From Octopus bimaculoides (Eukaryota), in NCBI RefSeq assembly GCF_001194135.2, contig NC_068989.1:57654528-57705094 (forward strand): a stretch of DNA of 50,567 bases, given 5' to 3'. How positions within the stretch are numbered: position 1 is the first letter of the stretch; each line of letters starts with the position of its first letter. The notes below the pieces were generated by a model. It searched no databases and was not told where the DNA came from. It saw only the letters and a program-made list of their open reading frames with translations. The position numbers and the translations under genes were made by a program. Shown here piece by piece: positions 3,450 to 45,166 of the stretch.

Positions 3450-5472
3450 TGTGTATACATATATGTGTATACATATATATACATGTATACATATATATAT
3501 GTATACATACATATACACATATACACATTCATACTGACATGCACACATTTCTAAAATATTTAGCCACACATATAAATAAAGAAAAATATGAAAAAAATTT
3601 TCCAAGAATACTTTGTGCACATGTTTTTCTGACATTTTCCCTAAAAGACAATTTTTGCTTGTCTTTTAGATCCTGGTTCTTCAAATATAGATTGACAAAA
3701 ATTGTCATTGAGACAATTTTTTTTTTAAATTCTACAAAAAAACTGCAAATTCTTCAAAATATTTTCCATTTTGTGTTTTCCATATCTTTTCCCTTTATTT
3801 AACTACTTGCCAATGTCAGTATACATTTTTGTGTATGCATATATACATATATATGAAGGTATATGTATACATATATACATATGCACATATATATATACAT
3901 ATATATAAGCATATACATATATGTATATATAATGCATATATATACTATACATATATGTATTATATCCAATGTTTTAACATGTATAAACAAAACAAGCCTC
4001 TAAATATATTTTACGTACTTACACTTATACATATATGTATTTCAATATATATGTTTTTACATATACACTCATATGATGCTTATATAAATATAAAATATAT
4101 ATGTACATATTTAATTATAAACACGAAACAAAATTTAATTATTCTTCTAATTACCTTTTTAAATTTTTTTAAACTTTTATCCCCCTTCTCTTCCCGAGCA
4201 AAAAAATACTGAAAAAATATGTTAAAAATATGAATATGTGTATGCATCTTTGTATACATATATATATAGTATATACATATATATATANNNNNNNNNNNNN
4301 NNNNNNNNNNNNNNNNNNNNNNNNNNNNNNNNNNNNNNNNNNNNNNNNNNNNNNNNNNNNNNNNNNNNNNNNNNNNNNNNNNNNNNNNNNNNNNNNNNNN
4401 NNNNNNNNNNNNNNNNNNNNNNNNNNNNNNNNNNNNNNNNNNNNNNNNNNNNNNNNNNNNNNNNNNNNNNNNNNNNNNNNNNNNNNNNNNNNNNNNNNNN
4501 NNNNNNNNNNNNNNNNNNNNNNNNNNNNNNNNNNNNNNNNNNNNNNNNNNNNNNNNNNNNNNNNNNNNNNNNNNNNNNNNNNNNNNNNNNNNNNNNNNNN
4601 NNNNNNNNNNNNNNNNNNNNNNNNNNNNNNNNNNNNNNNNNNNNNNNNNNNNNNNNNNNNNNNNNNNNNNNNNNNNNNNNNNNNNNNNNNNNNNNNNNNN
4701 NNNNNNNNNNNNNNNNNNNNNNNNNNNNNNNNNNNNNNNNNNNNNNNNNNNNNNNNNNNNNNNNNNNNNNNNNNNNNNNNNNNNNNNNNNNNNNNNNNNN
4801 NNNNNNNNNNNNNNNNNNNNNNNNNNNNNNNNNNNNNNNNNNNNNNNNNNNNNNNNNNNNNNNNNNNNNNNNNNNNNNNNNNNNNNNNNNNNNNNNNNNN
4901 NNNNNNNNNNNNNNNNNNNNNNNNNNNNNNNNNNNNNNNNNNNNNNNNNNNNNNNNNNNNNNNNNNNNNNNNNNNNNNNNNNNNNNNNNNNNNNNNNNNN
5001 NNNNNNNNNNNNNNNNNNNNNNNNNNNNNNNNNNNNNNNNNNNNNNNNNNNNNNNNNNNNNNNNNNNNNNNTATATATATATATATATATATGTATGCAT
5101 GTACACACACATATATGCATATCACATATGCATACATATATATGTGTGTGTGTATTTATATATCAGATATATATGTGTGTGTGTGCGTGCTTGTGCGCAT
5201 GTTTGCGTGCATGCTTGTATTCTCAAGACAACACCTCTTGCTTCAAATCAACCTGTTCATTCTTGCTAAATTAGCCACCATTTCCTCTCTACCTGTCCTC
5301 CAATCCCAATCTTTATGGAACATTTTAAACATACCTCTTTTTTTTTTGTATATATAACTTTGCACTTTACTATTTTCATGACAATGATGGCTACTTTGAT
5401 TAAACCTTTTTCTCACAGACTACAGTTGTCTTGCTTTGTTTTTTCAATTTATCTTTGCTTTTCACTCTAACA

Positions 5473-20783: not shown

Positions 20784-21676
20784 CCTTCATAGAAAATATT
20801 AATTTTCAATGAATGATATCAGAGTTTGCAGTGTAAGGGAGAAAATCAATTGAAAAGTTCTTTCCCTTGGTTTTGTAAAGTTGATATTCTCTTTTTTTTT
20901 TTAAATTTCATATTCTTGCTTTGTCACTATCAATAGAACAGTTCGGGCTTTCTCAGTATCGATAGAACATTTTACAAACAGTTCTTTCATTATTTTTATA
21001 CTTGCCGGCACTTCGTTAATCGAAATATTTTCCTTATTGCACGAAATGTGTCAAAAATCTTGTTGCTATTACCATGCTGCTACATGTTACCTCATGACTT
21101 ATGGTTAAAATGTTACTTCATTTCCTCTTATGAAGAACACACATTATTTCTTAAAAAACTGAAGAGAAATAACACTAATCTACAAATTACAGTAGAAAAA
21201 CTTGTTATATCTGACTATTATAATACAGACATATAATATTGTGTTTCTGTATACTGTGTAGTATAACATAATACGTGTTTGGACTTAGTAAGGGATTGTC
21301 TATATCTTAACAGTATATTCCCTTTATTTTAATGGTGTGCTTTTGAAGGATTTATGTACACTGAATAGACATTAGATGGCGTTAAATTTTTTGCCGAAGT
21401 TACGGGGACGTAAACATACCAGCATCGGTTGTCAAGCGATGTTGGTGGTGGGGACAAACACAGACACACACATATATATATATATACATATACGACGGGT
21501 TTCTTTCATTTTCCGTCTACCAAATCCACTTACAAGGCTTTGGTCGGCCCGAGGCTATAGTAGAAGACACTTGCCCAAGGTGCCACGCTGTGGGACTGAA
21601 CCCGGAACCATGTGGTTGGTAAGCAAGCTACTTACCACACAGCCATTCCGGCGCCTAAAAAAAATGTAAGTGCCTG

Positions 21677-21768
21677 CGCCCGCAGAGGGATTCGAACCCG
21701 CGACCCTCAGATTCCTTTACTCTATCATACATAAAAATCTGATGCTCTACCAACTGAGCTATGCGGGT
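21677..21768 (-). tRNA. tRNA-Lys(UUU) with 19-nt intron, variant copy A (A1:C72 mismatch, U32)
   Basis: Reverse complement gives a cloverleaf with UUU anticodon, intron TGTATGATAGAGTAAAGGA, intact A/B boxes and a T8 terminator at plus 21657-21664. Confidence 0.7.
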
Positions 21769-22144
21769 TACGACTTTGCTCATAAATATGTGACATTTTG
21801 TATTAGAAATATAGTAATACACTTGAATATTAGGCAGGTTATTTGCCATGTTGAAAATCCGTTCTTACATATTTCATTCGACGGATGCCACTGCTGTCAT
21901 TGACGCCATAATGTCCATGTTAGTTACTGACATACATATAAGACAATATTCCTATGTCAGCACATACTATATTATGACATAATACATGAGCTTAATGCTA
22001 TATTGTCTACATTTTAACAGTATATTTCCTATGTTAAAAGAGTGTGGTTTTAACAGATTTACGCTGAACAAGACAGAATAAATGACTTTTATCAGAATGT
22101 ATTTTCACAATAAAGAGTATTGGTGTATGTAATCGATCGTAACC

Positions 22145-22236
22145 GCCCGCATAGCTCAGTCGGTAGAACATCAGACTTTTACGAATAATGTAGTTGAGAG
22201 CTCTGAGGGTCGCGGGTTCGAATCCCTCTGCGGGCG
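22145..22236 (+). tRNA. tRNA-Lys(UUU) with 19-nt intron (22182-22200), copy B (C11:A24 mismatch, C38)
   Basis: GCCCGCATAGCTCAGTCGGTAGAACATCAGACTTTTA[CGAATAATGTAGTTGAGAG]CTCTGAGGGTCGCGGGTTCGAATCCCTCTGCGGGCG; T5 terminator at 22251-22255. Confidence 0.75.
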
Positions 22237-22881
22237 TAAGCGGTTTATTCTTTTTCTGTTAAAGCATTCGTTGACAGAAATTCGTTGTCTTTTAAATGAT
22301 GTAATATGCATGTGACTTTCCTCTGAACTACAATTTTGCTGTAAGGCCAGCAATTTCAACATCGACACATATGTTCAACTGGTATTTGTTTTATGGACTT
22401 CGAAACGCTAGAAACGCAAATTACACCTCGGCGGAATTTGAATTCTGTACGTAAAGACCGACGAAATGCCGCCAAGCATTTTGCCCGGCCTCCTAATGAT
22501 TCTGCCAGCTTGTCGCCTTAATCACTGAACAACAATATTGTTTCTATTATGAATATTTGATACAATAGAACAACTGCTGCAGTATTTCAACATAATATTA
22601 CCAAGTTAATACCTGACCCTCAGAGAATGAGTCAATCTAAACAAATATAATATCTATTATAACTCGGCACTCAGATTTCAACACCCGATCTTCGAATACA
22701 TCATCAATTACCATACATACATATTACCATACATCAATCACCATACATATTACAGTACATTTTCTCTATGATTATTTTCTAAAACAACAGGTCAAATTAA
22801 ACCAGAAGCTCGACGTTTGTGGGCCAAAATCTGTGAATCTCATTCAATATACTAATTCAGTTAATTCTCGTTATTTACCTT

Positions 22882-23303
22882 TGTAGTGACTTCTTATAGC
22901 AGACGACTGTTATATGTTCAATGTCCGCAGTTTTATCCACGCATGCGCAGGGACTAGTTCCGGAAGGAATACAGGAAGAGTCTCATGCGCATGCGTAGAG
23001 TTCGACACCCAGCTTTGGCGCCTTTTCTCAGTCTCTTCGTTGACTGAACTCCGTCGAGCCAAGACGTCCAACAGAGCTCTCTCACATGTCAGCACCAGAG
23101 CTTCACAAATAACCACGGAAATCATTCAGGAGGCGTCTCAGTAACCGAGGGCGACGAGCTACCGAATTCCCTCCAAGCGTGAACTGAATTCCACTGTAAA
23201 TAAATATTGTTATGTTGTTCAGAATCTGCGTTCCGTTGTTTCTTCTAGAAATTTAATGTACGGAAGCGGTGTACACCTAATGGAGTATAACCACTTCCCT
23301 ACA
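22882..23303 (+). mobile_element. Solo LTR (422 bp), probably Gypsy-type
   Basis: TGTAG...CTACA termini, 4-bp TSD CCTT (22878-22881 / 23304-23307), AATAAA at 23199-23204. Confidence 0.8.
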
Positions 23304-23821
23304 CCTTTGACTTCATTCTCTCTGTTTCTGCAGTCCTTATATATGCCAGAAACTGTTACGTTTTCGTATGAATTCATAATTCCACTCGCCTTGCACAATC
23401 AATCACTAGTGAGAATTTCACCAACGTTTGACAGAAACACTGAGTAGTTCCTATACAACACGGACGCCAAAATACTGCGGGTTTCGATTATCTCTCTTGT
23501 CTATGTTGTGACAGAGTCAATCACAATGGTTTTTCAATCATCGTTCATTTCGTTATAATTTATGCGGCAATTTTCTTCGTAAGCATGTCTCACCGTTTGG
23601 TCACCGCCATGTGTCAAAAATTTTGTTGTTAGTACCATGCCATTACATGTTAGTACCATGCTATTTAAGTCTCATGGCTTAAAGTTAGAAAGTTACTTCA
23701 TTTTTTCGTATAGAGAACATATATTATTATTGAATAGAAATAACACTAATATCTACAAATTTTACTGAAATTACAGTAGAAAAACGTGTTATATCTGCCC
23801 ATAATAATACATACATTTCTG

Positions 23822-24355
23822 CAGGGCCGGATTAAGACCCACCGAGGCCCTAAGCACTTGAAAGATTTTGGTGCCCCCATAAAAGATTATATAATTCAAA
23901 ATATAAACAATAACAATCCATAAAATAATTTTTTATTTTCAAAACGAAACAAAACAGTAAGAGGGAAAATAATGTTTATTTTTGTATACTCCCACTATAT
24001 TTATATTTGAAAAGTTTCCTCCTACTTTTTTGAATTGCAATGTCTTTGATCAAATCCTCGAAATTAATTTTAGGTAACACATCTGCATTTATACTTAGTA
24101 GAGATAAAGGATCCTGAATNNNNNNNNNNNNNNNNNNNNNNNNNNNNNNNNNNNNNNNNNNNNNNNNNNNNNNNNNNNNNNNNNNNNNNNNNNNNNNNNN
24201 NNNNNNNNNNNNNNNNNNNNNNNNNGAATATCATTTTAGCAAGTTAAAAGTGATTTCTTCTGTGCCGTAAACCATTTATCATTTCTGTGGTGCATCCTCC
24301 TTCTCTTGATGCCCTAAGCACGTGCTTATTTGACTTAATGGTTAATGCAGCGCTG
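23822..24355 (-). mobile_element. Short non-autonomous hAT-like element; a partial duplicate lies at about 25581-25885
   Basis: Ends CAGGGCCGGATTAA / TTAATGCAGCGCTG (imperfect TIR), internal GCCCTAAGCAC repeat and a hATC-like remnant LSLLSINTDVLPKINFEDLIKDIAIQKSR. It is absent from the paralogous site near 21235; no clear TSD. Confidence 0.65.
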
Positions 24356-24589
24356 AATGTATAACATGTGTGTTTCTGTATACTCAGTAGTACAGCATAA
24401 TAAGTGTTTGGACTTAGTGATGGATTGTCTATATCATAACAGTATATTTCCTTTATTTTTAACGGTGTAGTTTTAACAGATTTACACACAGTGAGCAGAC
24501 GATAGGATTAAATGATGGTATCAAAGACTTACTGTCAGAAACAATGTTATCGCTGAAGAACTACGCTTATAGCCAACACTCCCCACCCA

Positions 24590-24681
24590 CCCCGCGTACC
24601 TCAGTCGGTAGAGTATCAGCATTTCGCAATAAATATAGTAGAAGAATCTGAGGGTTGTGGGTTCGAATTTCTTTGCAAGCC
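24590..24681 (+). pseudogene. Degenerate intron-containing tRNA-Lys pseudogene, copy C
   Basis: Collinear 92-nt match to copy B including a 19-nt intron (24627-24645); acceptor, anticodon and T stems disrupted; anticodon position reads TTC. Confidence 0.7.
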
Positions 24682-25380
24682 TGAATGTATTATTTATTTT
24701 TGTTTTCTTAAAATGAATGTATTGACAGAATTGATAAAACTGCTTCGCGTTATCATACAACTCGTGCATGACTTCAAACACACATACCATAGGTAAACAT
24801 AAATACATAAGTAATTACATCTTCAGTCATTAGAAAACGCGGAGTACCGACTTGTTGAAAGAATTGCGGCAACACAAAGATCTGCTCTTTATAAAACAAA
24901 ATTTATGTACCGTAAATATTATAAGTGTAAACATGAGCCATTCTCACTCTCTCGTCTCTTCTACATTCACTTTGCTCATAAATATGGGACATTTTGTATT
25001 AGAAATATAGTAATACACTTGCGTAATGAACAATGAATGTAAGGTGCATGTGGAGAGGTTATTTGCCATGTTGAAAACCCGTTAATACATGTTTTGTTTG
25101 ACAGATGCCACTGCTGTCATTGAGTGAGTCATTGACACCATAATGTCCATGTTAGTTACTGTCATACATATAAGACAATATTCCTATGTCAGCACATGCT
25201 ATATTATGGCATAATACATGGCTGAGCTTAATGCTATATTGTCTACATTTTAACAGTATATTTCCTATGTTATAAAAGTGTGGTTTTAACAGATTTACGC
25301 TGAACAAGACAGAATAAATTACTTTTATCAGAATGTATTTTCACAATAAAGAGTATTGGTGCATGTGATCGATCGTAGCC

Positions 25381-25472
25381 GCCCGCATAGATCAGTCGGT
25401 AGAACATCAGACTTTTACGAGTAATATAGTGGAGAAATCTGAGGGTCGCGGGTTCGAATCACTCTGCGGGCG
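25381..25472 (+). pseudogene. tRNA-Lys(UUU) copy D, 19-nt intron (25418-25436), probable pseudogene
   Basis: Paralog of copy B with extra lesions A11 (D-stem) and A62 (T-stem/B box). Confidence 0.65.
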
Positions 25473-26116
25473 TAAGCGATTTATTCCTTTTCTGCTAATG
25501 CATTTGTTGACAGAAATTCCTTATGTCTTTTAAATGATGTAATATGCATGTGACTTTCCTCTGAACTACAATTTTGCTTTCAAAACAAAACAGTAAGAAG
25601 GAAAATAATGTTTATTTTTGTATACTCCCATTATATTTATATTTGAAAAGTTTCCTCCTACTTTTTTGAATTGCAATGTCTTTGATCAAATCCTCGAAAT
25701 TAATTTTAGGTAATACATCTGTATTTATACTGAGTAGAGATAAAGGCATCCTGAATATCATTTTAACAAGTTTAAAATGATTTCTTCTGTGCCGTAAACC
25801 ATTTACCATTTCTGTGGTGCATCCTCCTTCTCTTGATGCCCTAAGCACGTGCTTATTTGACTTAATGGTTAACCCAGCGCTGAATGTATAACATATGTGT
25901 TTCTGTATACTCAGTAGTATAGCATGATACTTGTTTGGACTTAGTGATGGATTGTCTATATCATAACAGTATATTTCCTTTATTTTTAACGGTGTAGTTT
26001 TAACAGATTTACACACAGTGAGCAGACGATAGGATTAAATGATGGTATCAAAGACTTACTGTCAGAAACAATGTTATCGCTGAAGAACTACGCTTATAGC
26101 CAACACTCCCCACCCA

Positions 26117-26179
26117 CCCCGCGTACCCCAGTCAGTAGAGTATCAGCATTTCGCAGTAAATATAGTAGAAGAATCTGAG
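26117..26179 (+). pseudogene. 3'-truncated duplicate of tRNA pseudogene C (copy E)
   Basis: Near-identical to 24590-24652, then breaks off after ATCTGAG. Confidence 0.7.
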
Positions 26180-27245
26180 CTGAATTAACCCGCAGTTTGG
26201 AGTTGATAAACGTAAAATGTATAATTATCAATTTCGTTAGTAGTTTATTATATGGTATTAAGCAACCTAGGTAATGAATAAAGCTTTTTTGAACAGAAAT
26301 TTGACAGTTAGTAATAAATGAAAGTCCATGAAATGAGATCGCAATTGCTGTAGGCATTGGGGATACTATATCTTACCTGACGCGTTTTGTAGCATGTAGT
26401 TATTTTATTCGCAATGCCTGACACAACCGCATTGAACCGTTTTTCAATTAATTCATGTATGATAAAGAAAAGTAAGAACAATGGCATATACAAAAATAAT
26501 TGTCAGAGCACGCTTATGAGCGAAATGTGTGCGTGAAGTAAGAATGGTCATTGTTAATAGCAATCACGGAAATGAAACAAAATATCAATGTAATGCTTGT
26601 AGAAAGTCTAATTGCTAATGGCTACAGATTGGCGTAAATGTGAAGATTGCAGTAGCGGAGTAACTACTGTGGGGCTGCTTTGTAGACGACATTTTTGGTT
26701 TTTCCTTCAGGAGCATAGATAAATAAGCTGTCTTGATGGCCAACTCTGGAACAACCGACATAGAACTGTCCATGTGAAAATCATGACGTTCGAAGGTCCA
26801 ATCCGACAACTTTCAGCGATTGACTTTGTTGATTGTCACGGTGAAGCTGAATTTGAGAGCGAACTGAACTCTCTGCATATGGTCTTTTAGGGTTAGTGGA
26901 ATCTTCGGAATAAAACGGTATCGTTTTTTTCCATGTCCAGTGATAATTTGCGCTTCAATGACGCGATCCATCATTTGTTTGACCACAAAGCGAGTTCCAT
27001 TGTATAGTGTGGGTGCGTTTAGATTGCGTAGGAGGATGACAGGGCAACCGACTTTTAAGTGAAGTTCATGGGGAGGGAGTCCGGGAGGATATTTGGAGTC
27101 GAGAAATTCTGTTGGGAAGTGTGTAACCTGATCGAGATTGGTAACAGTGTCAACTGATCTGCAACAACGTTCTTGAGAAGGTAGCTTACTAAGTCGTAGT
27201 TAAGAGTGGCGACAGCTGCATTTGTAGGTGCAAGAACAGCTCTAT
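26180..27245 (-). mobile_element. Helitron 3' fragment encoding the PIF1-like helicase C-terminus (26664-27243, frameshifted)
   Basis: RAVLAPTN, FPTEFL..PPGLPPHELHLKVGCPVILLRNL...NGTR, VFIPKIP, FSHGQFYVGCSRV and KTKNVVY..*. Confidence 0.85.
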
Positions 27246-28345
27246 GCTAACGTATGAATATCGGCAGGTTGCAGAAAATGTAAAATCTGTATAACTGTCA
27301 CAACTTTGAGTAAAAGCAGAGAATATATATGATATTGATTAATTTCTGAAGGCATTTAAAAAATAATTAAAAGTTGATTTAAATTACATGGCTACCTCAA
27401 GGAAGTGAAAGTATCGGCGGTTTGCAGTGAATGGGCATTGTAAAAACTGTAGAAGACGAAGTGAAAGTAGCATGACTATGTCATCAAGGGAGTAATGTCC
27501 CTTGAAACAACAATCGTTGGTATTTGTTATTTACCTATGAGTAGGTGTTTTCGTCCCCTAGGGACGGCATTACTCATTATGTGGAAAATTTCAAGGGCTT
27601 GTGACCATCTCTGAAACATAAGTGATGTAAGTTCCCAGCGTAAACGAAATCGGATGATAAACACACATACACACATCTTCCGTTTTATTANNNNNNNNNN
27701 NNNNNNNNNNNNNNNNNNNNNNNNNNNNNNNNNNNNNNNNNNNNNNNNNNNNNNNNNNNNNNNNNNNNNNNNNNNNNNNNNNNNNNNNNNNNNNNNNNNN
27801 NNNNNNNNNNNNNNNNNNNNNNNNNNNNNNNNNNNNNNNNNNNNNNNNNNNNNNNNNNNNNNNNNNNNNNNNNNNNNNNNNNNNNNNNNNNNNNNNNNNN
27901 NNNNNNNNNNNNNNNNNNNNNNNNNNNNNNNNNNNNNNNNNNNNNNNNNNNNNNNNNNNNNNNNNNNNNNNNNNNNNNNNNNNNNNNNNNNNNNNNNNNN
28001 NNNNNNNNNNNNNNNNNNNNNNNNNNNNNNNNNNNNNNNNNNNNNNNNNNNNNNNNNNNNNNNNNNNNNNNNNNNNNNNNNNNNNNNNNNNNNNNNNNNN
28101 NNNNNNNNNNNNNNNNNNNNNNNNNNNNNNNNNNNNNNNNNNNNNNNNNNNNNNNNNNNNNNNNNNNNNNNNNNNNNNNNNNNNNNNNNNNNNNNNNNNN
28201 NNNNNNNNNNNNNNNNNNNNNNNNNNNNNNNNNNNNNNNNNNNNNNNNNNNNNNNNNNNNNNNNNNNNNNNNNNNNNNNNNNNNNNNNNNNNNNNNNNNN
28301 NNNNNNNNNNNNNNNNNNNNNNNNNNNNNNNNNNNNNNNNNNNNN

Positions 28346-30449: not shown

Positions 30450-31440
30450 TGACGTCAGTCATAATGCTTATGTCGAATGTGACATTTGTGCCCCACAAAC
30501 GATTTGTAAAGAAGCCCACATGTGTTGCAAGTTTGAGGATTACGGGTCAGTGCAGGCGGTATATTTGCAGCCGCTTTTCTCCCTTGCCTTGCACCTCAAC
30601 CTGTTAATGCTGGTTGCAACAAAATTTCTTATACCATTTTGACACGACGATCTCCATTTTGTTCGATCCAGAGTTGTTTGTTCAAAGATGTTGTGAGTAT
30701 ATTGACTGCTGAGAGGTTACTCTTCAACTTGTCTTTATATCTAAGCCATGGTCGACCAACATTGCTGTTCTCACCATCAAGCTAGTTGTACATGAAAACT
30801 TTGGATATTCTTTCGTCACTCATTCTAACGATATGGCCAGCGCAATTGCGACTGCATGAGGAAGCTCTCTGTTCCACTAATCTTACTCTTGCTAAACAGA
30901 TCGGCATTAGAAGCTTTGTCTTTTAGTGAATAACCGTAAATTGTTTTGAGACAGCCTTTATGGAAGATGTCTAGTTGGTTAATGTGCCGTCCATAGGGTG
31001 TCCACGATTCTGGACCATACAAGAGAGTAGTAAGAATGGCAGCTTTATAGACTTGCACTTTGGTGTTAAGTTTAATGCCCCTTTCATTCCAGAAGAGATG
31101 ACGGAGTTTTCCAAATGTGTTGGCTGCTCTTGCAAGATGGTTGACGATTTCCTCAAGGGAAGCGCTCGTATTCACATTGCTACCAAAATATGTAAATGAC
31201 TAGATATTTTAGGTCTTTCCCATCAACCTGTATAGGAGTGTCAGGAAACTTTGAACGCCAACTCAAGAGGTAGATTAACCGTTGTGTAACCCTTCAAAGC
31301 CCTTGGATTTTCGAATTTTTGGTGCGATACACGAGTAGGGGCTTTAATTTCATAACACCAGCGGCATTTCCTCTCAAAAGAAGTTCTAGACGACTTTTGG
31401 AAGCTGTTGGTCTTGATTTTCCTTCTCAAGAACTAAAAGT
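30450..31440 (-). mobile_element. Decayed RTE-BovB-like LINE, 3' part of ORF
   Basis: FTYFGS..EEIVNHLARAANTFGKLRHLFWNERGIKLNTKVQVYKAAILTTLLYGPESWT..QLRW. Confidence 0.85.
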
Positions 31441-32313
31441 TTTAACAGGCATGTGCCTTCAGAAGAGTGCAGTTTCGTCAAATATTTTTTACTTGTTCTG
31501 GTGTGTAACCCACCACCACCACATCCACCACTTCAGCAATCATGTATATAGATAGATAGATAGATACATACATACATACATACATACATACATACATACA
31601 TACATACAAACAAGCAACTTAAACGAAAAAGAAAAAGCGAGACCTTTGAGAAAGGTAGAGAAAGGGACGGAAGAAACCAAAAGTTATTGTGAGTCGCTAC
31701 AATATGAAATAGCGCATAAGACTTCCTCTATTCGTTGATTGTCGCTACCCACAACTTTGAGTCTGGTAAATATCTTAGTTAGAAGTCACTTACCTCTGAT
31801 GAACGCTTGGAATTGTGTTGATACTTACCAGGCAAGAGCACAAGGGATTAAGTGGAAGAGGTCAGGATAATGGACTTTTGTAATGTGTGTGCATGTAAAT
31901 GTGTGTGCATATGTGCATATGTATATATATGTGTGTGTAGATGTGTGTATATGGATAACAGTATGCGTATGTACAAAGCGTATATGTTGAGGGTGCACAG
32001 CTAGCACATTTATATAAACATTTCTAAAGAGAAAATTTAGTTTATATCTTTCTCCCAAAATACTATTTCCTTTCTTATAAAGAACATTCGTCAAAATTCT
32101 TAAACAACTTCTATGTCAGAATGCCCAAATACTTTAATATAATACTGATATGTTTGGTGCTTGCGCCAGATCTTTTCGCAATAACTAAATTTTTTGCTAT
32201 TTATTATTGTTAATATTATTATTATCATCATCATCATTAATTTAAATAAATATTTGTAATTCGCTACGGATAGTCGTGTGAATAGAAACATTGTTCTCTT
32301 ACACAGCGCAGTT

Positions 32314-33942
32314 TTATGTAAGAAGAGGCTGTTCTATGTTTTGACCGGTCTCTTGTAAGGTATGCTCGTTTTCATCACCTGCTGGAATGTCTGGACTGAG
32401 AATCGTTGTTTCTTCATCTTTTTCATCGTTATTGTCATCGGTAATAGTGCCAAGCCCTTCATTCGCAGTCTTCTCGGGTTCTGCCATTGGGGCAACACTC
32501 TTCAACGCGACTGTACTTTTATCATCGGGTTTTGGTAAAGTATGTATCGTTTGATCGCCTCTCGGGAGTTTTGGACTTGGAATCACTGTTTCAACTTTTT
32601 TATCGAATTTGTTGATAAATCTGTCGAGCGATGCTTTCTCGGGTGAAAATGAAGTACTGCTGGATAATCTACGTTTCTGCTCTTCAGTTTTGAAATAAGT
32701 ATCCTTGAAGTCCATAATAGGGATACAGTTTTTGTGACGTTCTAGGAGTGTTTTCTTCACTGTTGCTGGAGTCAGTACTTCTTCGGAAACAGACATTTTC
32801 CTTTTGCGGCCGTTCTGTTCACCTGGGTATTTGGGAATACAGTTCTTGTGATATTCCGTGTATGTCTTAACGCGTGTTTTAGATTTACTTGACGAAAAAA
32901 TCTTGTAATAGATGGAATCGGGGAAACAATTTTTGTGACGATCCACGAATGTCGTTTGAGAATTGAACATAAATGGTTTTTTTCTGGGCTCCTTCTTTAG
33001 GAAGCTGAGAGGAGGGAAACAATTTCTGTGGTGATCCATTAATACCTTCTGATATGTTGTTGTAGCTGGCCTTAGACCATCAGAATATATGGCAGTGGGA
33101 ATTCTTCCTGCTTTCAGCTCTTCTTGCGTTGAATCAATCGCTGTCAGGATCGGTACTTGATAGTCAAAAGGGATGTTCTTCTTTTCCTCGACGGGGATCT
33201 CCATAGCTGCTATATTCATCATGTTGTCTATGCTAGTTTTTGAAGACTGAAAACTGGATCGCTTTTTAGAAGCAGTCACCGAAGTTTTTGTGGGTAATTC
33301 AGATGTCCTGTATTTAGCTGATTTATTTTCGGAAATTCGACTTCGCTCCTTTGCTGATGTCTTTACTGAAGATTCTTGTGCTTTTGTGTCTTTTTTGGGG
33401 CTATCACGTCTTTTTTTAGATTTTTTTCCTGTAAGTTCTTTACTGCGAGCACTTTTTTCTGTAATTTGATCGGATGATGAGAGCTTAGACTTATCGGAAA
33501 ATTTTAAAGCCTTAGCTCCATCGAGTTTCCCCAAATCCTTACCTTGACCGAGCTTTCCTGAGTCCTTAACTTGATCGAGTTTTCCCAAATCCTTAGCTTC
33601 GCTGAGAGATTTCAAGTCTTTAGCCTGATCAGGATATTTCAAGTCTTTAGCCTGATCAGGATATTTCAAGTCTTTAGCCTGATCAGGATATTTCAAGTCT
33701 TTAGCCTGATCAGAAGATTCCAAGTCCTTAGCTTTATCGAGTTCTTCCAAGTCCTTAGCTTTATCGAGTTCTTCCAAGTCCTTAGCCTTATCGAGTTTTT
33801 TCAAATCCTCCTTCTTTTCACTTACAGGAGTTGCTTCTAGATACAAAATAGGACCAGATTTTCCAAGTCTAATACTAATACTCTTACTATCTGCAATCGA
33901 AGCAGTTATTTTATTACAAGACCCATACAATTTGATGTCCAT
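32314..33942 (-). CDS. Uncharacterised 542-aa Lys/Ser/Asp-rich protein with twelve 9-aa tandem repeats (aa 42-149) and four H[K/R]NC[F/I]P motifs (aa 305-408); possibly extended by 10 aa via an upstream micro-exon
   Basis: 1629-nt uninterrupted ORF in AT-rich DNA where other long ORFs are microsatellite, gap or TE artefacts. Start context AAAAATGG; AATAAA on minus strand at 32200-32205, about 110 nt past the stop; synonymous codon variation between motif copies. No transposase or RT motifs. Confidence 0.85.
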   Translation of the reverse strand: MDIKLYGSCNKITASIADSKSISIRLGKSGPILYLEATPVSEKKEDLKKLDKAKDLEELDKAKDLEELDKAKDLESSDQAKDLKYPDQAKDLKYPDQAKDLKYPDQAKDLKSLSEAKDLGKLDQVKDSGKLGQGKDLGKLDGAKALKFSDKSKLSSSDQITEKSARSKELTGKKSKKRRDSPKKDTKAQESSVKTSAKERSRISENKSAKYRTSELPTKTSVTASKKRSSFQSSKTSIDNMMNIAAMEIPVEEKKNIPFDYQVPILTAIDSTQEELKAGRIPTAIYSDGLRPATTTYQKVLMDHHRNCFPPLSFLKKEPRKKPFMFNSQTTFVDRHKNCFPDSIYYKIFSSSKSKTRVKTYTEYHKNCIPKYPGEQNGRKRKMSVSEEVLTPATVKKTLLERHKNCIPIMDFKDTYFKTEEQKRRLSSSTSFSPEKASLDRFINKFDKKVETVIPSPKLPRGDQTIHTLPKPDDKSTVALKSVAPMAEPEKTANEGLGTITDDNNDEKDEETTILSPDIPAGDENEHTLQETGQNIEQPLLT

Positions 33943-34341
33943 TTTTCTTACAACCTTACTTCTGTCGTTTAATAAAATTTATAAAACAGTAGTCACAATT
34001 TCATACGTTATTTTTGCTTGTTGTTTGTTACTATTCTTTGTTTTTTTTTTCTTTTATCAGATCAACACATATCGAACATATTGAGTTTCTACTACAAACG
34101 CTTTAGAAATAACATGATTCAATTTTAGGCGAATCAAGCAGAAAGAAAACTGTTTGTTTCTTTGTTTAATTTTTCTCAGAAAATATCAACAAAATATGCT
34201 TGAAATGGCGTTAGGTTATCAAACATGACGAATATACACAATATTTTCAATGTTATAGTCTACTTGTACCTTTCAAAACGACTAATAACTTAGATAGTTC
34301 GATATATTGTTATCCAAAATGCAGCTGTGGTAGACACTTAC

Positions 34342-35393: not shown

Positions 35394-35425
<32 letters not shown>

Positions 35426-35567
35426 CGTATGTATATATGCATGCATGCATATATGTATGTATGTATGTATATTTCCCTTCATAGAAAATATTCTTTTCTA
35501 CTCTCGGCACAAGGCCCGAAATTTTGGAGGAGGGGACCAGTCGATTAGATCGACCCCAGTATGCAGT

Positions 35568-37880
35568 AGAGTAGAGGCGATAGGGTTTAGTAAGGAAATA
35601 GCCTTAGAGGAATCTAGGATAGAGGGAGAGCTAGTTAGGAAGCTAGAAGAGGCGCTTAGGAGAGGTATAGCGACTGATATGCTGGTGGCGAGATTGGCTC
35701 TTGGTCAATTCTTCAACGCCAAGCATGAAGGTTGCGTTGCCAGAGCTAGGGCACGTACACTAAGACATGCTGGTACGAAAGCTGTTCGATTGACCCGGGT
35801 GACAGAAGTGCAACGTGACAACAAACCCACAATTTGGTATTTGATGGGCTGGGACGGGCGCACGCTACACGAATCCAAGCAAATATTTACGGAATTTCAG
35901 CGGTACTTCGCCAAACTGTTCGGGATGCGCGATATGCTGGGAATGGAGGTGTATTTCACCTCCTACTTCGGCAGCATGCCGCGCTTTTCAGCCAGGGATG
36001 CGAAGTTCTGCGAAATGCCGATAACAGCCGAAGTAACACGGGACGCGATGACGGGTTGCAGAGGAGAGAAATCTCCGGGAATGGATGGCTTTATCTTCAT
36101 ATGCCAGACTTGTTTGGTAACTTCTTGGTAGCGATCACAACTGGCAGCAGATCGGGAGAATACCCATTGCTGTAGGCTGTGGCTTGGTGGTGCTACTGAA
36201 AAAGGACCCGAACAAGGGAAACCAAATACATAATTCTAGGCCCATAACTCTGCTGAACGCAGATTATAAGATTTTGGCAAAGGTGTTAGCCAAGAGGTTG
36301 GCGCTTGTCGTCGATAAGCTGGTCGGTGATGCACAGACATGCGCTATCCCCAACAGGTCTATCCATGACAACCTCCACCTCGCACGCTACATCACAGAGA
36401 GGGTAGTGAAGGAACCTGGTATCAATCGAAAGCTTTTTTCAAGATCGACCATCAAAACTCTGAGGCTATCCTCGCAGCGGCCGGTTTCGGTCCCGTTTTC
36501 AGAGGCTGGATCGCTGCAATGTACAGCGACATCTGTTCGGTGGTCAAAGTAAACGGCCACCTATCGGAATCGTTTAGCATCGCTTGTTCGATCCGTTATG
36601 GATGCCTGCTCACTCCACTTTTGTATGTGCTGGCTCTCGAGCCATTACTAAAGAAGTCGGATATTTCGAGGGGCACCCCGCGTGATCTAGGATGCGGAAG
36701 GTTCGTATCAATTTATGCGGACGACGTTACCATAATAGTGTCGAACAGCTCGGAAATCGAGGTGATCGGTACTNNNNNNNNNNNNNNNNNNNNNNNNNNN
36801 NNNNNNNNNNNNNNNNNNNNNNNNNNNNNNNNNNNNNNNNNNNNNNNNNNNNNNNNNNNNNNNNNNNNNNNNNNNNNNNNNNNNNNNNNNNNNNNNNNNN
36901 NNNNNNNNNNNNNNNNNNNNNNNNNNNNNNNNNNNNNNNNNNNNNNNNNNNNNNNNNNNNNNNNNNNNNNNNNNNNNNNNNNNNNNNNNNNNNNNNNNNN
37001 NNNNNNNNNNNNNNNNNNNNNNNNNNNNNNNNNNNNNNNNNNNNNNNNNNNNNNNNNNNNNNNNNNNNNNNNNNNNNNNNNNNNNNNNNNNNNNNNNNNN
37101 NNNNNNNNNNNNNNNNNNNNNNNNNNNNNNNNNNNNNNNNNNNNNNNNNNGAATGCGTACATCGCTTCCGTCATCTACTACTACCTGACCGTCGTCCCTG
37201 GCGCTGCTTCGTGGCTGATCAGGCTGGAGCGCTTGTTCTTCCGCTTTCTGTTGAAGGGACATGTTCAGCTCATCAGCCGCTGAGCGGAGGACTGGACATG
37301 CCGTGGCTAATGATGTGCAGACATACGCTGAGGCTTCGACATTTTCAGCGTTTTTTTAACGGTGAGCAGGTGTGGTCGCCATTTGTCAAACGGGATTTTC
37401 CATGGCTAGTCTCATTGACGGAGCTACAGTCTTGAATCAAACGTCGACCAAGAAAGGCCGCTTGGCACCTGGAGTGTCGGCAAGCGCTTACAGCTTTCTG
37501 CCAGTCAGACAACGCTGTCAGTTGAAGTTACACTATGGAGTTCTATAAGGGATTAGTGGCGGATAAAGGACGACGTCCTCGGGGAAACTCTGGACATCGG
37601 AAGGGATCAATTAAATGGTCTTTTCCGGAGGACTTTCGGGCCGGGGCCTGTGGATAACTTCCAGAAATCCTTGACTTGGCAGTGCTACTTGGAAGCTCTA
37701 CCGGTTTGAGATAAGCTCTACAAACACGGAAGTGCTGTTAGACGGACCTCTCCGAGCTATGCGCAGAGCGACGAAACCATCCTGCATACATTCGTCCAGT
37801 GTCCGTGCGTTAATGACTTGTGAAGCTTTCTCGAACAGCTGTTGATGCGTGCAGGACGAATCTAGTTATCAGTTCTTATG
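35568..37880 (+). mobile_element. 5'-truncated decayed Tx1/L1-clade LINE ORF2
   Basis: KSPGMDG, RPITLLNADYKILAKVLAKRL, YADDVTI and C-terminal C..C..ET..H.F..C knuckle; frameshifts and internal gap 36774-37150. Confidence 0.9.
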
Positions 37881-45079: not shown

Positions 45080-45166
45080 CGCCCACAGAGGGACTCGAAC
45101 CCGCGACCCTCAGATGTCATGAGAGGACTTAAAAGTCTGATGCTCTACCGACTGAGCTATGCGGGC
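45080..45166 (-). tRNA. tRNA-Lys(UUU) with 14-nt intron (45116-45129); most intact copy (copy F)
   Basis: GCCCGCATAGCTCAGTCGGTAGAGCATCAGACTTTTA[AGTCCTCTCATGAC]ATCTGAGGGTCGCGGGTTCGAGTCCCTCTGTGGGCG. Acceptor, D and anticodon stems pair; intron lies between positions 37 and 38; T5 terminator 6 nt downstream (plus-strand A-run 45069-45073). Confidence 0.9.

What the first reader, a model, noticed from the sequence alone, without database searches (positions are those of the whole stretch)
32713..33054. Unrecognised protein with a four-times repeated T-x4-H[K/R]NC[F/I]P-like motif
Seen: QKVLMDHHRNCFP, QTTFVDRHKNCFP, VKTYTEYHKNCIP and KKTLLERHKNCIP, with His at aa 305, 336, 365 and 403 (spacing 29-38 aa) and unrelated linkers. 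Codons differ synonymously between copies (AAA/AAG, AAT/AAC, ATT/ATC, CCC/CCT), so the motif appears maintained at the protein level. I do not recognise the motif. Inference: short repeated motifs in a basic disordered protein resemble polymer-binding repeats such as those of axonemal/sperm microtubule-associated proteins; alternatively the invariant His/Cys pairs could bind metal or form disulfide cross-links.
Basis: partly seen in the sequence, partly recalled or inferred. Interest (0 to 1): 0.75.

Follow-up and report, generated by a model that had tools for sequence, protein, structure and literature searches.

The report
Octopus orphan protein, four His-Cys motifs
The four-fold K-T-x-x-[D/E]-[R/Y]-H-K-N-C-[F/I]-P motif is real and sits in a transcribed, intronless, fast-evolving gene found so far only in octopuses; it matches no known protein family, so its role (most likely pairwise zinc binding or docking on a repeating polymer) is still a hypothesis.

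Summary
A 542-aa single-exon ORF (window 32314-33942, minus strand) carries four H[K/R]NC[F/I]P motifs with His at aa 305, 336, 365 and 403. Four of the protein's five Cys lie in these motifs.

Two orthologues exist. One is an Octopus vulgaris "hypothetical protein" at a syntenic, single-exon locus. The other is a full-length RNA contig from an octopus metatranscriptome, so the gene is transcribed. All 12 motif copies keep His, Cys and Pro, and the spacing (31/28-29/38) is kept. The rest of the protein evolves almost neutrally (dN/dS 0.6-0.9), and one segment evolves faster than that (3.6).

Pfam, PDB sequences, 1.84 billion protein-cluster representatives and a profile search found nothing outside octopods. 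Tau/MAP repeats and all other curated Pfam families, including axonemal repeats and zinc fingers, were tested and gave no match. AlphaFold2 predicts disorder everywhere except a small N-terminal β unit.

My best reading, inferred and held at about 0.35, is that the four register-locked H-x2-C units are zinc-knuckle half-sites. They would pair to clasp or cross-link a basic disordered protein on a polyanionic partner. A link to testis or sperm is untested.

The parts
32314..33942 (-). Complete single-exon CDS (542 aa plus stop) of the orphan protein.
   Evidence: It is the longest real ORF in the window. It is colinear from Met1 to the stop with O. vulgaris CAI9728509.1 and with the RNA contig L002. 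An in-frame stop lies 39 nt upstream of the ATG.
33013..33048 (-). Motif unit 1, aa 299-310: KVLMDHHRNCFP.
32920..32955 (-). Motif unit 2, aa 330-341: TTFVDRHKNCFP.
32833..32868 (-). Motif unit 3, aa 359-370: KTYTEYHKNCIP.
32719..32754 (-). Motif unit 4, aa 397-408: KTLLERHKNCIP.
32779..32808 (-). Conserved basic/phospho-acceptor patch RKRKMSVSEE (aa 379-388) in the linker between units 3 and 4. It looks like a nuclear localisation signal or a site for a basophilic kinase (one that phosphorylates Ser/Thr next to basic residues).
   Evidence: The patch reads R-[KR]-R-K-[MF]-S-V-S-[ED]-E in all three orthologues. Its function is inferred from the sequence pattern only.
32677..32715 (-). Conserved block MDFKDTYFKTEEQ (aa 410-422) directly after unit 4.
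   Evidence: It is nearly invariant in the three orthologues.
33506..33809 (-). 27-nt tandem repeat (about 11 copies). It encodes the 9-aa [D/L][Q/D][A/K]AKDL-type repeats of the N-terminal third (about aa 45-146).
   Evidence: Tandem Repeats Finder. Copy number differs among the three species.
33823..33942 (-). N-terminal 40 aa. This is the only part predicted to fold, as three short β-strands.
   Evidence: AlphaFold2 pLDDT is 65-76, with strands at aa 12-18, 21-26 and 32-36. The segment is conserved in three species.
32317..32664 (-). Acidic C-terminal tail (aa 427-542; pI 4.5, charge -11).
33943..34024 (-). 5'UTR supported by the transcript and colinear with the genome, so it contains no intron.
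   Evidence: L002 nt 1-82 align without gaps to the genomic DNA. Identity is 95% to O. vulgaris and 80% to the third species, against 85% and 70-74% for the CDS.
33993..34004 (-). Three-codon upstream ORF, ATGAAATTGTGA, in the 5'UTR.
   Evidence: It is invariant in the window, O. vulgaris and the RNA contig. A regulatory role is inferred only.
32265..32313 (-). Conserved proximal 3'UTR.
   Evidence: Identity is 98% to O. vulgaris and 82% to the RNA contig.

Best explanation
Window 32314-33942 (-) is a real, transcribed, intronless, single-copy gene that has so far been detected only in octopods. It encodes a lysine/serine-rich protein that is largely intrinsically disordered. Its parts are a small N-terminal β unit, variable 9-aa repeats, a very basic middle and an acidic tail. 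The one strongly constrained element is an array of four units with the consensus K-T-Φ-x-[D/E]-[R/Y]-H-K-N-C-[F/I]-P. These units sit at fixed distances of 31, 28-29 and 38 residues. My preferred mechanism is inferred, not shown. Each unit would be an H-x2-C zinc-knuckle half-site. The even number of half-sites would pair, within one chain or between chains, into two His2Cys2 zinc sites. Metal binding would thereby clasp or cross-link an otherwise floppy polycation while it sits on a polyanionic partner such as chromatin, nucleic acid or the acidic microtubule surface. The gene's other features are rapid evolution, the lack of introns and UTRs that are better conserved than the coding sequence. 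These fit a tissue-restricted, possibly male-germline, protein, but that is a guess.
For: Shown:
- The ORF is intact and colinear in three octopods, although synonymous divergence reaches about 0.5.
- The O. vulgaris copy is syntenic and single-exon.
- An RNA-derived 1660-nt contig from the octopus metatranscriptome SRR3401912 carries the complete CDS. Both of its UTRs are colinear with the genome.
- H, C and P are invariant in 12 of 12 motif copies. Asn is kept in 11 of 12, and all 12 have an acidic residue at position -2 and a hydrophobic residue at +4.
- Core positions are conserved far above the rest of the region (19/20 against 60/121, Fisher p=6.6e-5).
- The array has almost no indels. 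O. vulgaris has none, and the third species has only two 1-aa gaps. Elsewhere the protein has many long indels.
- Four of the 5 Cys in the protein are motif Cys.
- The copy number is four in all three species.
- AlphaFold2 sees no autonomous fold in the array (pLDDT 31-49). That fits a region which folds only with a ligand or metal.

From established knowledge:
- H-x2-C is a standard zinc knuckle in LIM, PHD, RING and PARP-type fingers.
- Half-site zinc bridging is known from the Rad50 zinc hook.
- Cys is the residue most depleted in disordered regions, so an invariant His and Cys three residues apart points to metal binding rather than to a plain docking motif.
Against: - No zinc-finger family in Pfam matches, even at E<=10.
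- AlphaFold2 did not bring the motifs into a confident compact module, either in the full-length protein or in the isolated region. The alignment behind those models had only 3 sequences.
- The linkers are hydrophilic and poorly conserved, which is unlike classical fingers.
- Nothing here measures metal binding.
- Constraint on the array is only moderate (dN/dS 0.43-0.58).
- The tissue of expression and the binding partner are unknown.
Confidence: 0.35

Rival explanations
1. Metal-free polymer-binding repeats. Each unit would be a short linear motif that docks on successive subunits of a periodic lattice, most plausibly the microtubule wall or lumen, as tau/MAP2 repeats and axonemal inner proteins do. 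His, Cys and Pro would serve as contact residues.
For: - There are four units 28-38 aa apart and their register is kept across species. Tau repeats are 31-32 aa long, about one per 8-nm tubulin dimer (established knowledge).
- The context is strongly basic and disordered, with an acidic tail.
- The region before each core also shows a conserved pattern, K-T-Φ-x-[D/E].
Against: - Pfam shows no similarity to the tau/MAP tubulin-binding repeat, nor to any other curated family such as SAXO/MAP6, STPGR or THEG, even at E<=10.
- hhalign against human tau R1-R4 gives probability 0.3%.
- No chain in the PDB, which includes the solved sperm and ciliary doublet proteins, matches the region or the unit profile.
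- An invariant Cys is unusual in a pure docking motif.
- There is no evidence of axonemal or testis expression.
Confidence: 0.3
2. Redox or disulfide cross-linking module. The four Cys would form inter-chain disulfides that harden a structure, as Cys-X-Pro-rich sperm-tail proteins (ODF1, Drosophila Mst87F) and Cys-containing protamines do.
For: - Each unit has one invariant Cys followed by x-Pro.
- The protein is basic and evolves fast.
- C-X-P motifs in sperm-tail proteins are recalled from the literature. That is a lead, not a test.
Against: - The invariant His three residues before every Cys is left unexplained.
- The units are not tandem C-G-P tripeptides; they lie 28-38 aa apart.
- There is no signal peptide, and no oxidising compartment is evident.
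- Pfam and the PDB give no match.
Confidence: 0.1
3. The ORF is a young, weakly constrained taxon-restricted gene, and the motif array is a relic of internal duplication with little or no specific function.
For: - Whole-gene dN/dS is 0.64-0.92.
- The CDS is less conserved than its flanks, 85% against 92-93% identity to O. vulgaris.
- In that species pair, motif-region dN (0.074) is about equal to flank divergence.
- No homologue was found outside octopods.
Against: - A 500+-codon ORF is kept open in three species at dS of about 0.5, and every indel preserves the frame.
- The motif core is significantly more conserved than its surroundings.
- The copies differ at synonymous sites, so they are old and held by selection on the protein, not by recent duplication.
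- The gene is transcribed and has conserved UTRs.
Confidence: 0.1
4. The ORF is a transposon- or virus-derived ORF rather than a host gene.
For: - The gene is intronless.
- Retrotransposon fragments flank it on both sides.
Against: - It is single-copy and syntenic in O. vulgaris.
- Only two relatives exist among 1.84 billion cluster representatives, whereas a mobile element would be multi-copy.
- It has no Pfam, viral or TE domain.
Confidence: 0.03

Closest known systems
Tau/MAP2/MAP4 tubulin-binding repeats (Pfam PF00418)
   Same: Both have three or four imperfect repeats of about 30 aa in a basic, intrinsically disordered protein. In both, a short conserved core contains His and Pro. Tau R2 and R3 also carry a Cys, and tau binds Zn through these Cys and His residues (established knowledge).
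   Different: There is no sequence relationship. Pfam is silent at E<=10 and hhalign gives probability 0.3%. The core here is H-K-N-C-[F/I]-P rather than H-x-P-G-G-G. Cys is invariant in every unit here. Microtubule binding is untested.
H-x2-C zinc knuckles of LIM, PHD, RING and PARP-type zinc fingers
   Same: The His-x-x-Cys spacing is the same, and a hydrophobic or aromatic residue follows the Cys, as in the LIM 'H-x2-C-F' signature. The 27-35 residues between half-sites resemble the PARP-type pattern C-x2-C-x28-30-H-x2-C. All of this is recalled from established consensus patterns.
   Different: Each unit has only two ligands, there is no C-x2-C partner knuckle, and the linkers are hydrophilic and variable. 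No Pfam zinc-finger model matches. AlphaFold2 gives no fold.
Zinc-binding basic spermatid proteins (mammalian transition protein 2, protamine 2) and Cys-containing cephalopod protamines
   Same: These are also basic, fast-evolving proteins with scattered His and Cys that bind Zn or form cross-links. The mammalian transition-protein and protamine genes also rely on UTR-based translational control. This comparison comes from the literature and was not tested here.
   Different: Those proteins are short and Arg-rich. This one is 542 aa and Lys/Ser-rich, with an ordered four-unit array. No homology was detected, and germline expression is not shown.
Axonemal microtubule inner-protein and sperm-tail repeats (SAXO/MAP6 Mn modules, STPGR/SHIPPO, THEG, ODF1/Mst87F C-X-P)
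   Same: These proteins also carry short motifs repeated along a disordered basic chain. The [T]-[T/K]-[Y/F]-x-x-[D/E] stretch before each core here is loosely like the T-x-Y-x-x-D-[YF] pattern of SAXO modules (recalled).
   Different: No Pfam match was found and no match to any solved axonemal protein chain. The motifs are not tandem tripeptides.

Membership tests
Tau/MAP2/MAP4 tubulin-binding repeat (PF00418) | Sequence match to the 31-32-aa repeat profile (…K-x-G-S-x-x-N-[IL]-x-H-x-P-G-G-G). | tested here: not met
   hmmscan against Pfam-A at E<=10 gave no hit for the window protein, for either orthologue or for the isolated region. hhalign of A3 against human tau R1-R4 gave probability 0.3% over 6 aligned columns.
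Tau/MAP2/MAP4 tubulin-binding repeat (PF00418) | Three to five repeats about 31 aa apart in a basic disordered region. | tested here: met
   There are four units spaced 31/29/38 aa, the region has pI 9.9, and pLDDT is below 50. This is a resemblance in architecture only.
Tau/MAP2/MAP4 tubulin-binding repeat (PF00418) | Binds microtubules. | not testable with these tools
   It needs co-sedimentation, TIRF microscopy or cryo-EM.
Other curated repeat families of sperm and cilia (SAXO/MAP6 STOP modules, STPGR/SHIPPO, THEG) | Match to the family profile. | tested here: not met
   The Pfam-A scan at E<=10 returned no such family for any of the three proteins. These families were tested only through that whole-library scan, on my recollection that Pfam curates them. 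Weak hits above E of about 0.1 may have been filtered out.
Solved axonemal/ciliary microtubule inner proteins (PDB) | Sequence similarity to any chain of a solved structure. | tested here: not met
   The region profile A3 hit only a ferritin at E=0.19. The unit profile A6 hit only a single HKNCIP string in protoporphyrinogen oxidase at E=1.4. Both are chance-level.
Zinc fingers (LIM, PHD, RING, PARP-type, C2H2 and others) | Match to a curated zinc-finger profile. | tested here: not met
   No Pfam family was found at E<=10.
Zinc fingers (LIM, PHD, RING, PARP-type, C2H2 and others) | Four Cys/His ligands per metal, arranged as two knuckles. | tested here: inconclusive
   Eight invariant candidate ligands are present as four H-x2-C knuckles. 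AlphaFold2 gives no confident fold that pairs them, and its alignment had only 3 sequences.
Zinc fingers (LIM, PHD, RING, PARP-type, C2H2 and others) | Stoichiometric Zn binding. | not testable with these tools
   It needs metal analysis of the protein.
ODF1 / Mst87F-type Cys-X-Pro sperm-tail proteins | Tandem C-G-P / C-X-P tripeptide arrays. | tested here: not met
   C-[F/I]-P occurs four times, 28-38 aa apart, and is never in tandem.
EB1-binding SxIP motif proteins | [S/T]-x-[I/L]-P in a basic Ser-rich region. | tested here: not met
   Only 1 of the 12 units (TCIP in P0002) fits. The other eleven have N at the first position, and half have F instead of I/L.
Transposable-element or viral ORF | Multi-copy, with TE or viral domains. 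| tested here: not met
   The gene is single-copy and syntenic, has no paralogue in the window or in L001, has only two relatives in 1.84 billion representatives, and has no TE domain.

The most novel reading that the evidence does not exclude
The array defines a previously undescribed, octopod-restricted metal-dependent binding module. Four H-x2-C half-sites would assemble with zinc, within or between chains, to lock a rapidly evolving and possibly sperm-specific polycation onto chromatin or the axoneme. The adjacent basic segment is under positive selection. That would make the gene a lineage-specific reproductive innovation in cephalopods.
Probability: 0.25. Interest if true: 0.6.

Novelty: new variant of a known kind. 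Interest (0 to 1): 0.4.

Why it matters
If the inference holds, this protein would be a clean natural example of single H-x2-C half-sites used as repeated, register-locked metal clasps in a disordered protein. It would also be a taxon-restricted octopod gene that combines a conserved functional core with a segment evolving faster than neutral. Such a gene is a useful handle on how new genes acquire function in cephalopods, and possibly on octopus reproduction. As it stands, it is one of many uncharacterised lineage-specific proteins. The motif is real and conserved, but no function has been demonstrated. The O. vulgaris orthologue is already deposited as 'hypothetical protein' CAI9728509.1.

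Tried and rejected
- Pfam-A at E<=10 was run on the full protein, on both orthologues and on the isolated region. It returned nothing, or sub-threshold noise only (CYTL1, DUF3005, DUF5509, MamL-1).
- A word-indexed search of 5.8 billion proteins found only O. vulgaris when the full protein was used. The isolated region and the 3-sequence profile found nothing. The region search failed to recover even the O. vulgaris orthologue, so the index misses things.
- An exhaustive phmmer search of aa 240-430 against 1.84 billion representatives found only the two octopod proteins.
- PDB sequence searches with the region profile and the unit profile gave chance-level hits only.
- hhalign against the tau repeats was negative.
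- AlphaFold2 on the full-length protein and on the region alone produced no confident structure in the array. I therefore ran no fold search, because it would be meaningless on such models.
- An exact-sequence look-up of the window protein found it absent from the collection.
- Literature searches for the accession numbers and for the motif strings returned no papers. A search on octopus, sperm, proteome and testis found nothing that could be linked to this gene.
- Rfam found nothing in or next to the gene.
- I considered and rejected these readings: intein or Hedgehog-type 'N|C' or 'G|CFP' autoprocessing (there is no Hint domain and the units are only about 30 aa apart), heme-regulatory Cys-Pro motifs (the pattern here is C-x-P, not C-P), a secreted structural protein (there is no signal-peptide-like N-terminus), and a TE or viral ORF (the gene is single-copy and syntenic).
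Full report
**Observation.** The minus strand of window 32314-33942 is one uninterrupted 542-codon ORF, by far the longest genuine ORF in the window. Its translation contains HRNCFP, HKNCFP, HKNCIP and HKNCIP, with His at aa 305, 336, 365 and 403. The four copies use different synonymous codons for Lys, Asn, Ile and Pro. Given the protein's own composition, 0.004 H-x2-C-x-P matches are expected in 542 residues, and four occur. None occurs in any other frame of the 50.6-kb window. Four of the 5 Cys in the protein lie in the motifs.

**Is it a gene?** A search of 5.8 billion proteins found one relative. This is Octopus vulgaris CAI9728509.1 / A0AA36F8U7, 'hypothetical predicted protein', 526 aa, 65-70% identical and colinear from Met1 to the stop. 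Its gene is a single exon on chromosome record OX597822.1. The surrounding DNA is syntenic with the window for several kb on both sides, and the downstream neighbour in that record is a claudin/PMP22-type gene.

An exhaustive phmmer search of aa 240-430 against 1.84 billion cluster representatives added one more protein, P0002 (507 aa, 53% identical in that region). P0002 is encoded on a 1660-nt contig assembled from SRR3401912. PMC11662614 identifies that run as the octopus metatranscriptome of Shi et al.. The contig carries the full CDS, 82 nt of 5'UTR with an in-frame stop, and 54 nt of 3'UTR ending in AATAAAT. Both UTRs align without gaps to the genomic DNA of the window and of O. vulgaris.

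The gene is therefore transcribed and intronless over the whole known mRNA. An in-frame stop 39 nt upstream of the ATG in the window excludes an upstream coding extension. No paralogue is present in the window or in the O. vulgaris locus. The window's own protein is not in the protein collection. The window species is an octopod about 92-93% identical to O. vulgaris in non-coding flanks.

**Evolutionary rates.** I computed Nei-Gojobori estimates in a script.
- Between the window and O. vulgaris, whole-gene dN/dS is 0.92. Against the third species it is 0.64-0.79.
- The motif region (aa 297-426) is the most constrained part, at 0.43-0.58.
- The basic segment aa 161-296 shows dN=0.243 against dS=0.067, a ratio of 3.6 (Fisher p about 0.001), in the window/O. 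vulgaris pair.
- The CDS is less conserved at the nucleotide level (85%) than its 5' flank (93%) and 3' flank (91.5%). The 150 nt around motifs 3-4 reach 93%.
- The UTRs are more conserved than the CDS. They are 95-98% identical to O. vulgaris and 80-82% to the third species, against 85% and 70-74% for the CDS.

This is the profile of a weakly constrained, partly positively selected gene with a conserved core and conserved regulatory ends. The ORF nevertheless stays open over more than 500 codons at dS of about 0.5, and every indel preserves the frame.

**Anatomy of the array.** Across the 12 copies (4 units x 3 species), H, C and P are invariant. Asn is kept in 11 of 12 and Lys at +1 in 9 of 12. 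All 12 have an acidic residue at -2, and all 12 have F/I/V at +4. Position -4 is hydrophobic in 11 of 12, Thr occupies -5 in 8 of 12, and Lys occupies -6 in 9 of 12. This gives the consensus K-T-Φ-x-[D/E]-[R/Y]-H-K-N-C-[F/I]-P.

The His-to-His distances are 31/29/38, 31/29/38 and 31/28/38 in the three species. The array has no indel relative to O. vulgaris and only two 1-aa gaps relative to the third species, whereas the N-terminal half and the tail contain many long indels. Core positions (H, N, C, Φ, P) are identical at 19 of 20 sites between the window and the most distant orthologue, against 60 of 121 for the rest of the region (Fisher p=6.6e-5).

Two further blocks inside the array are conserved: R-[KR]-R-K-[MF]-S-V-S-[ED]-E between units 3 and 4, and [M/I]-F-K-D-T-Y-x-K-T-E-E-Q after unit 4. 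The region is very basic (pI 9.9, +16), the preceding segment likewise (+11), and the tail is acidic (-11).

**Relatives and families.**
- Pfam-A at E<=10 returns nothing for the window protein or O. vulgaris, and only sub-threshold noise for P0002 and the isolated region.
- A 3-sequence profile of the array finds nothing more among 5.8 billion proteins.
- In the PDB, that profile finds only a ferritin at E=0.19.
- A profile of the 12 units finds only a single HKNCIP string in protoporphyrinogen oxidase at E=1.4.
- hhalign against the four human tau repeats gives probability 0.3%.
- The literature library holds neither the accessions nor the motif strings.

The family is therefore, as far as these searches reach, restricted to octopods and unassigned. 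A squid or other molluscan relative that retains only the short cores could have been missed. The E-value bar in a library of 1.8 billion sequences is high, and I could not run an iterated profile search.

**Structure prediction.** AlphaFold2 with the 3-sequence alignment gives mean pLDDT 37.6. Only aa 1-40 reach 65-76, as three short strands, and the array scores 31-49. The array alone gives pLDDT below 50 at every residue. This supports intrinsic disorder. It gives no support to an autonomous zinc-finger fold, but with so shallow an alignment it does not exclude one.

**Mechanism.** Three things are shown: a constrained, register-locked, four-unit array in a disordered polycation; invariance of a His and a Cys three residues apart in each unit; and an even copy number in all three species. 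What follows is inferred.

An invariant H-x2-C pair is the standard geometry of a zinc knuckle, as in LIM, PHD, RING and PARP-type fingers. Cys is otherwise strongly avoided in disordered regions. Single half-sites that pair across chains are known from the Rad50 zinc hook. I therefore favour, at about 0.35, a model in which the four half-sites pair into two His2Cys2 sites, within or between chains. The metal would then clasp or cross-link the protein while its basic segments sit on a polyanionic partner.

It is supported by the tau-like unit length and the fixed register, and weakened by the lack of any similarity to known microtubule-binding repeats. The two models are not exclusive, since tau itself binds zinc through repeat-region Cys and His. 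Disulfide cross-linking (about 0.1) does not explain the invariant His. A near-neutral young gene with a relic repeat (about 0.1) is contradicted by the conservation of the core. A TE or viral origin (about 0.03) is contradicted by single-copy synteny.

Several features recall post-meiotic male-germline genes: the absence of introns, rapid evolution, conserved UTRs and an invariant 3-codon uORF. The absence of the gene from other protein sets in the collection may point the same way. No tissue information was available, so that link is a guess.

**Comparison with known systems.** In architecture the array works most like tau/MAP repeats or like zinc-binding basic spermatid proteins. It is a member of neither, because the profile-based membership tests failed. 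I rate it a new variant of a known kind, namely a short-motif array or zinc half-sites in a disordered basic protein, carried by an unassigned octopod-restricted family. One orthologue is already deposited but uncharacterised.

**Verdict.** Its function remains open. Interest is moderate (0.4), because taxon-restricted repeat proteins are common. Against that, the invariant His/Cys array with locked spacing, next to a positively selected segment, is a clean and testable case.

Noticed in passing
window 33993-34004 (-), within the 5'UTR 33943-34024: A three-codon upstream ORF (ATG AAA TTG TGA) is invariant in the window, O. vulgaris and the RNA contig. It lies in a roughly 45-nt block (GTATGAAATTGTGA.TAC.GTTTTATAAATTTTA) that is far better conserved than the coding sequence. 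It may be a translational control element.
   Followed up: partly
window 32265-32313 (-): The first 50 nt or so of the 3'UTR are 98% identical to O. vulgaris and 82% identical to the third species, which is better than the CDS. The RNA contig ends right after an AATAAA. The window and O. vulgaris have no canonical AATAAA at the aligned position and run into an AT-rich microsatellite.
   Followed up: partly
window 33055-33462 (-), aa 161-296 of the protein: In the basic Ser/Lys-rich segment, dN=0.243 and dS=0.067 between the window species and O. vulgaris (ratio 3.6, Fisher p about 0.001). This is a pairwise signal of positive selection just upstream of the motif array. It is not seen against the more distant third species, where the ratio is 0.68-0.81.
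   Followed up: partly
window 33506-33809 (-): A 27-nt tandem repeat of about 11 copies encodes 9-aa KDL-type repeats. Copy number and sequence differ among the three species. The 89-aa ORF on the opposite strand (33571-33840, +) is a by-product of this repeat.
   Followed up: partly
window 33823-33942 (-), aa 1-40: A conserved N-terminal segment (MDIKLYGSCN.ITA…GKSGPILYLEA) is the only part AlphaFold2 predicts with moderate confidence (pLDDT 65-76). It forms three short β-strands and contains the fifth, conserved Cys (C9). It has no family match.
   Followed up: no
window 36184-36552 (+), and neighbouring ORFs at 35409-37435 (+): There is a reverse-transcriptase fragment here (Pfam RVT_1, E=6.7e-07, right at the curated cut-off), interrupted by assembly gaps. 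It looks like a decayed non-LTR retrotransposon 1.5-3.5 kb upstream of the gene.
   Followed up: partly
window 30825-31175 (-): A 116-aa ORF looks like the C-terminal part of a non-LTR retrotransposon ORF2 by eye, but it has no Pfam hit. The DNA at 30632-31606 is 89.5% identical to the O. vulgaris locus, so the insertion predates the split of the two species.
   Followed up: partly
window 45080-45166 (-), 21677-21768 (-), 22145-22236 (+), 25381-25472 (+): Four Rfam tRNA matches of 87-92 nt score 43-58 bits. ARAGORN calls two of them, with abnormal anticodon loops. They are probably tRNA-derived SINE copies rather than tRNA genes.
   Followed up: partly
window about 21400-26200, matching L001 17100-21581: DNA homologous to the O. 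vulgaris region that carries a claudin/PMP22-type gene (L001 20005-21581, -) is present but rearranged or duplicated relative to O. vulgaris. I did not work out the gene model in the window.
   Followed up: no
window-wide, e.g. 1500-2000, 4300-5050, 27700-28330, 36770-37150: The window has many runs of N (assembly gaps) next to (TATG)n/(ACAT)n-type microsatellites, so it comes from a draft assembly. GC is 19-25% in the first 6 kb against about 35-40% elsewhere. The GC figure is probably an artefact of the gaps.
   Followed up: no
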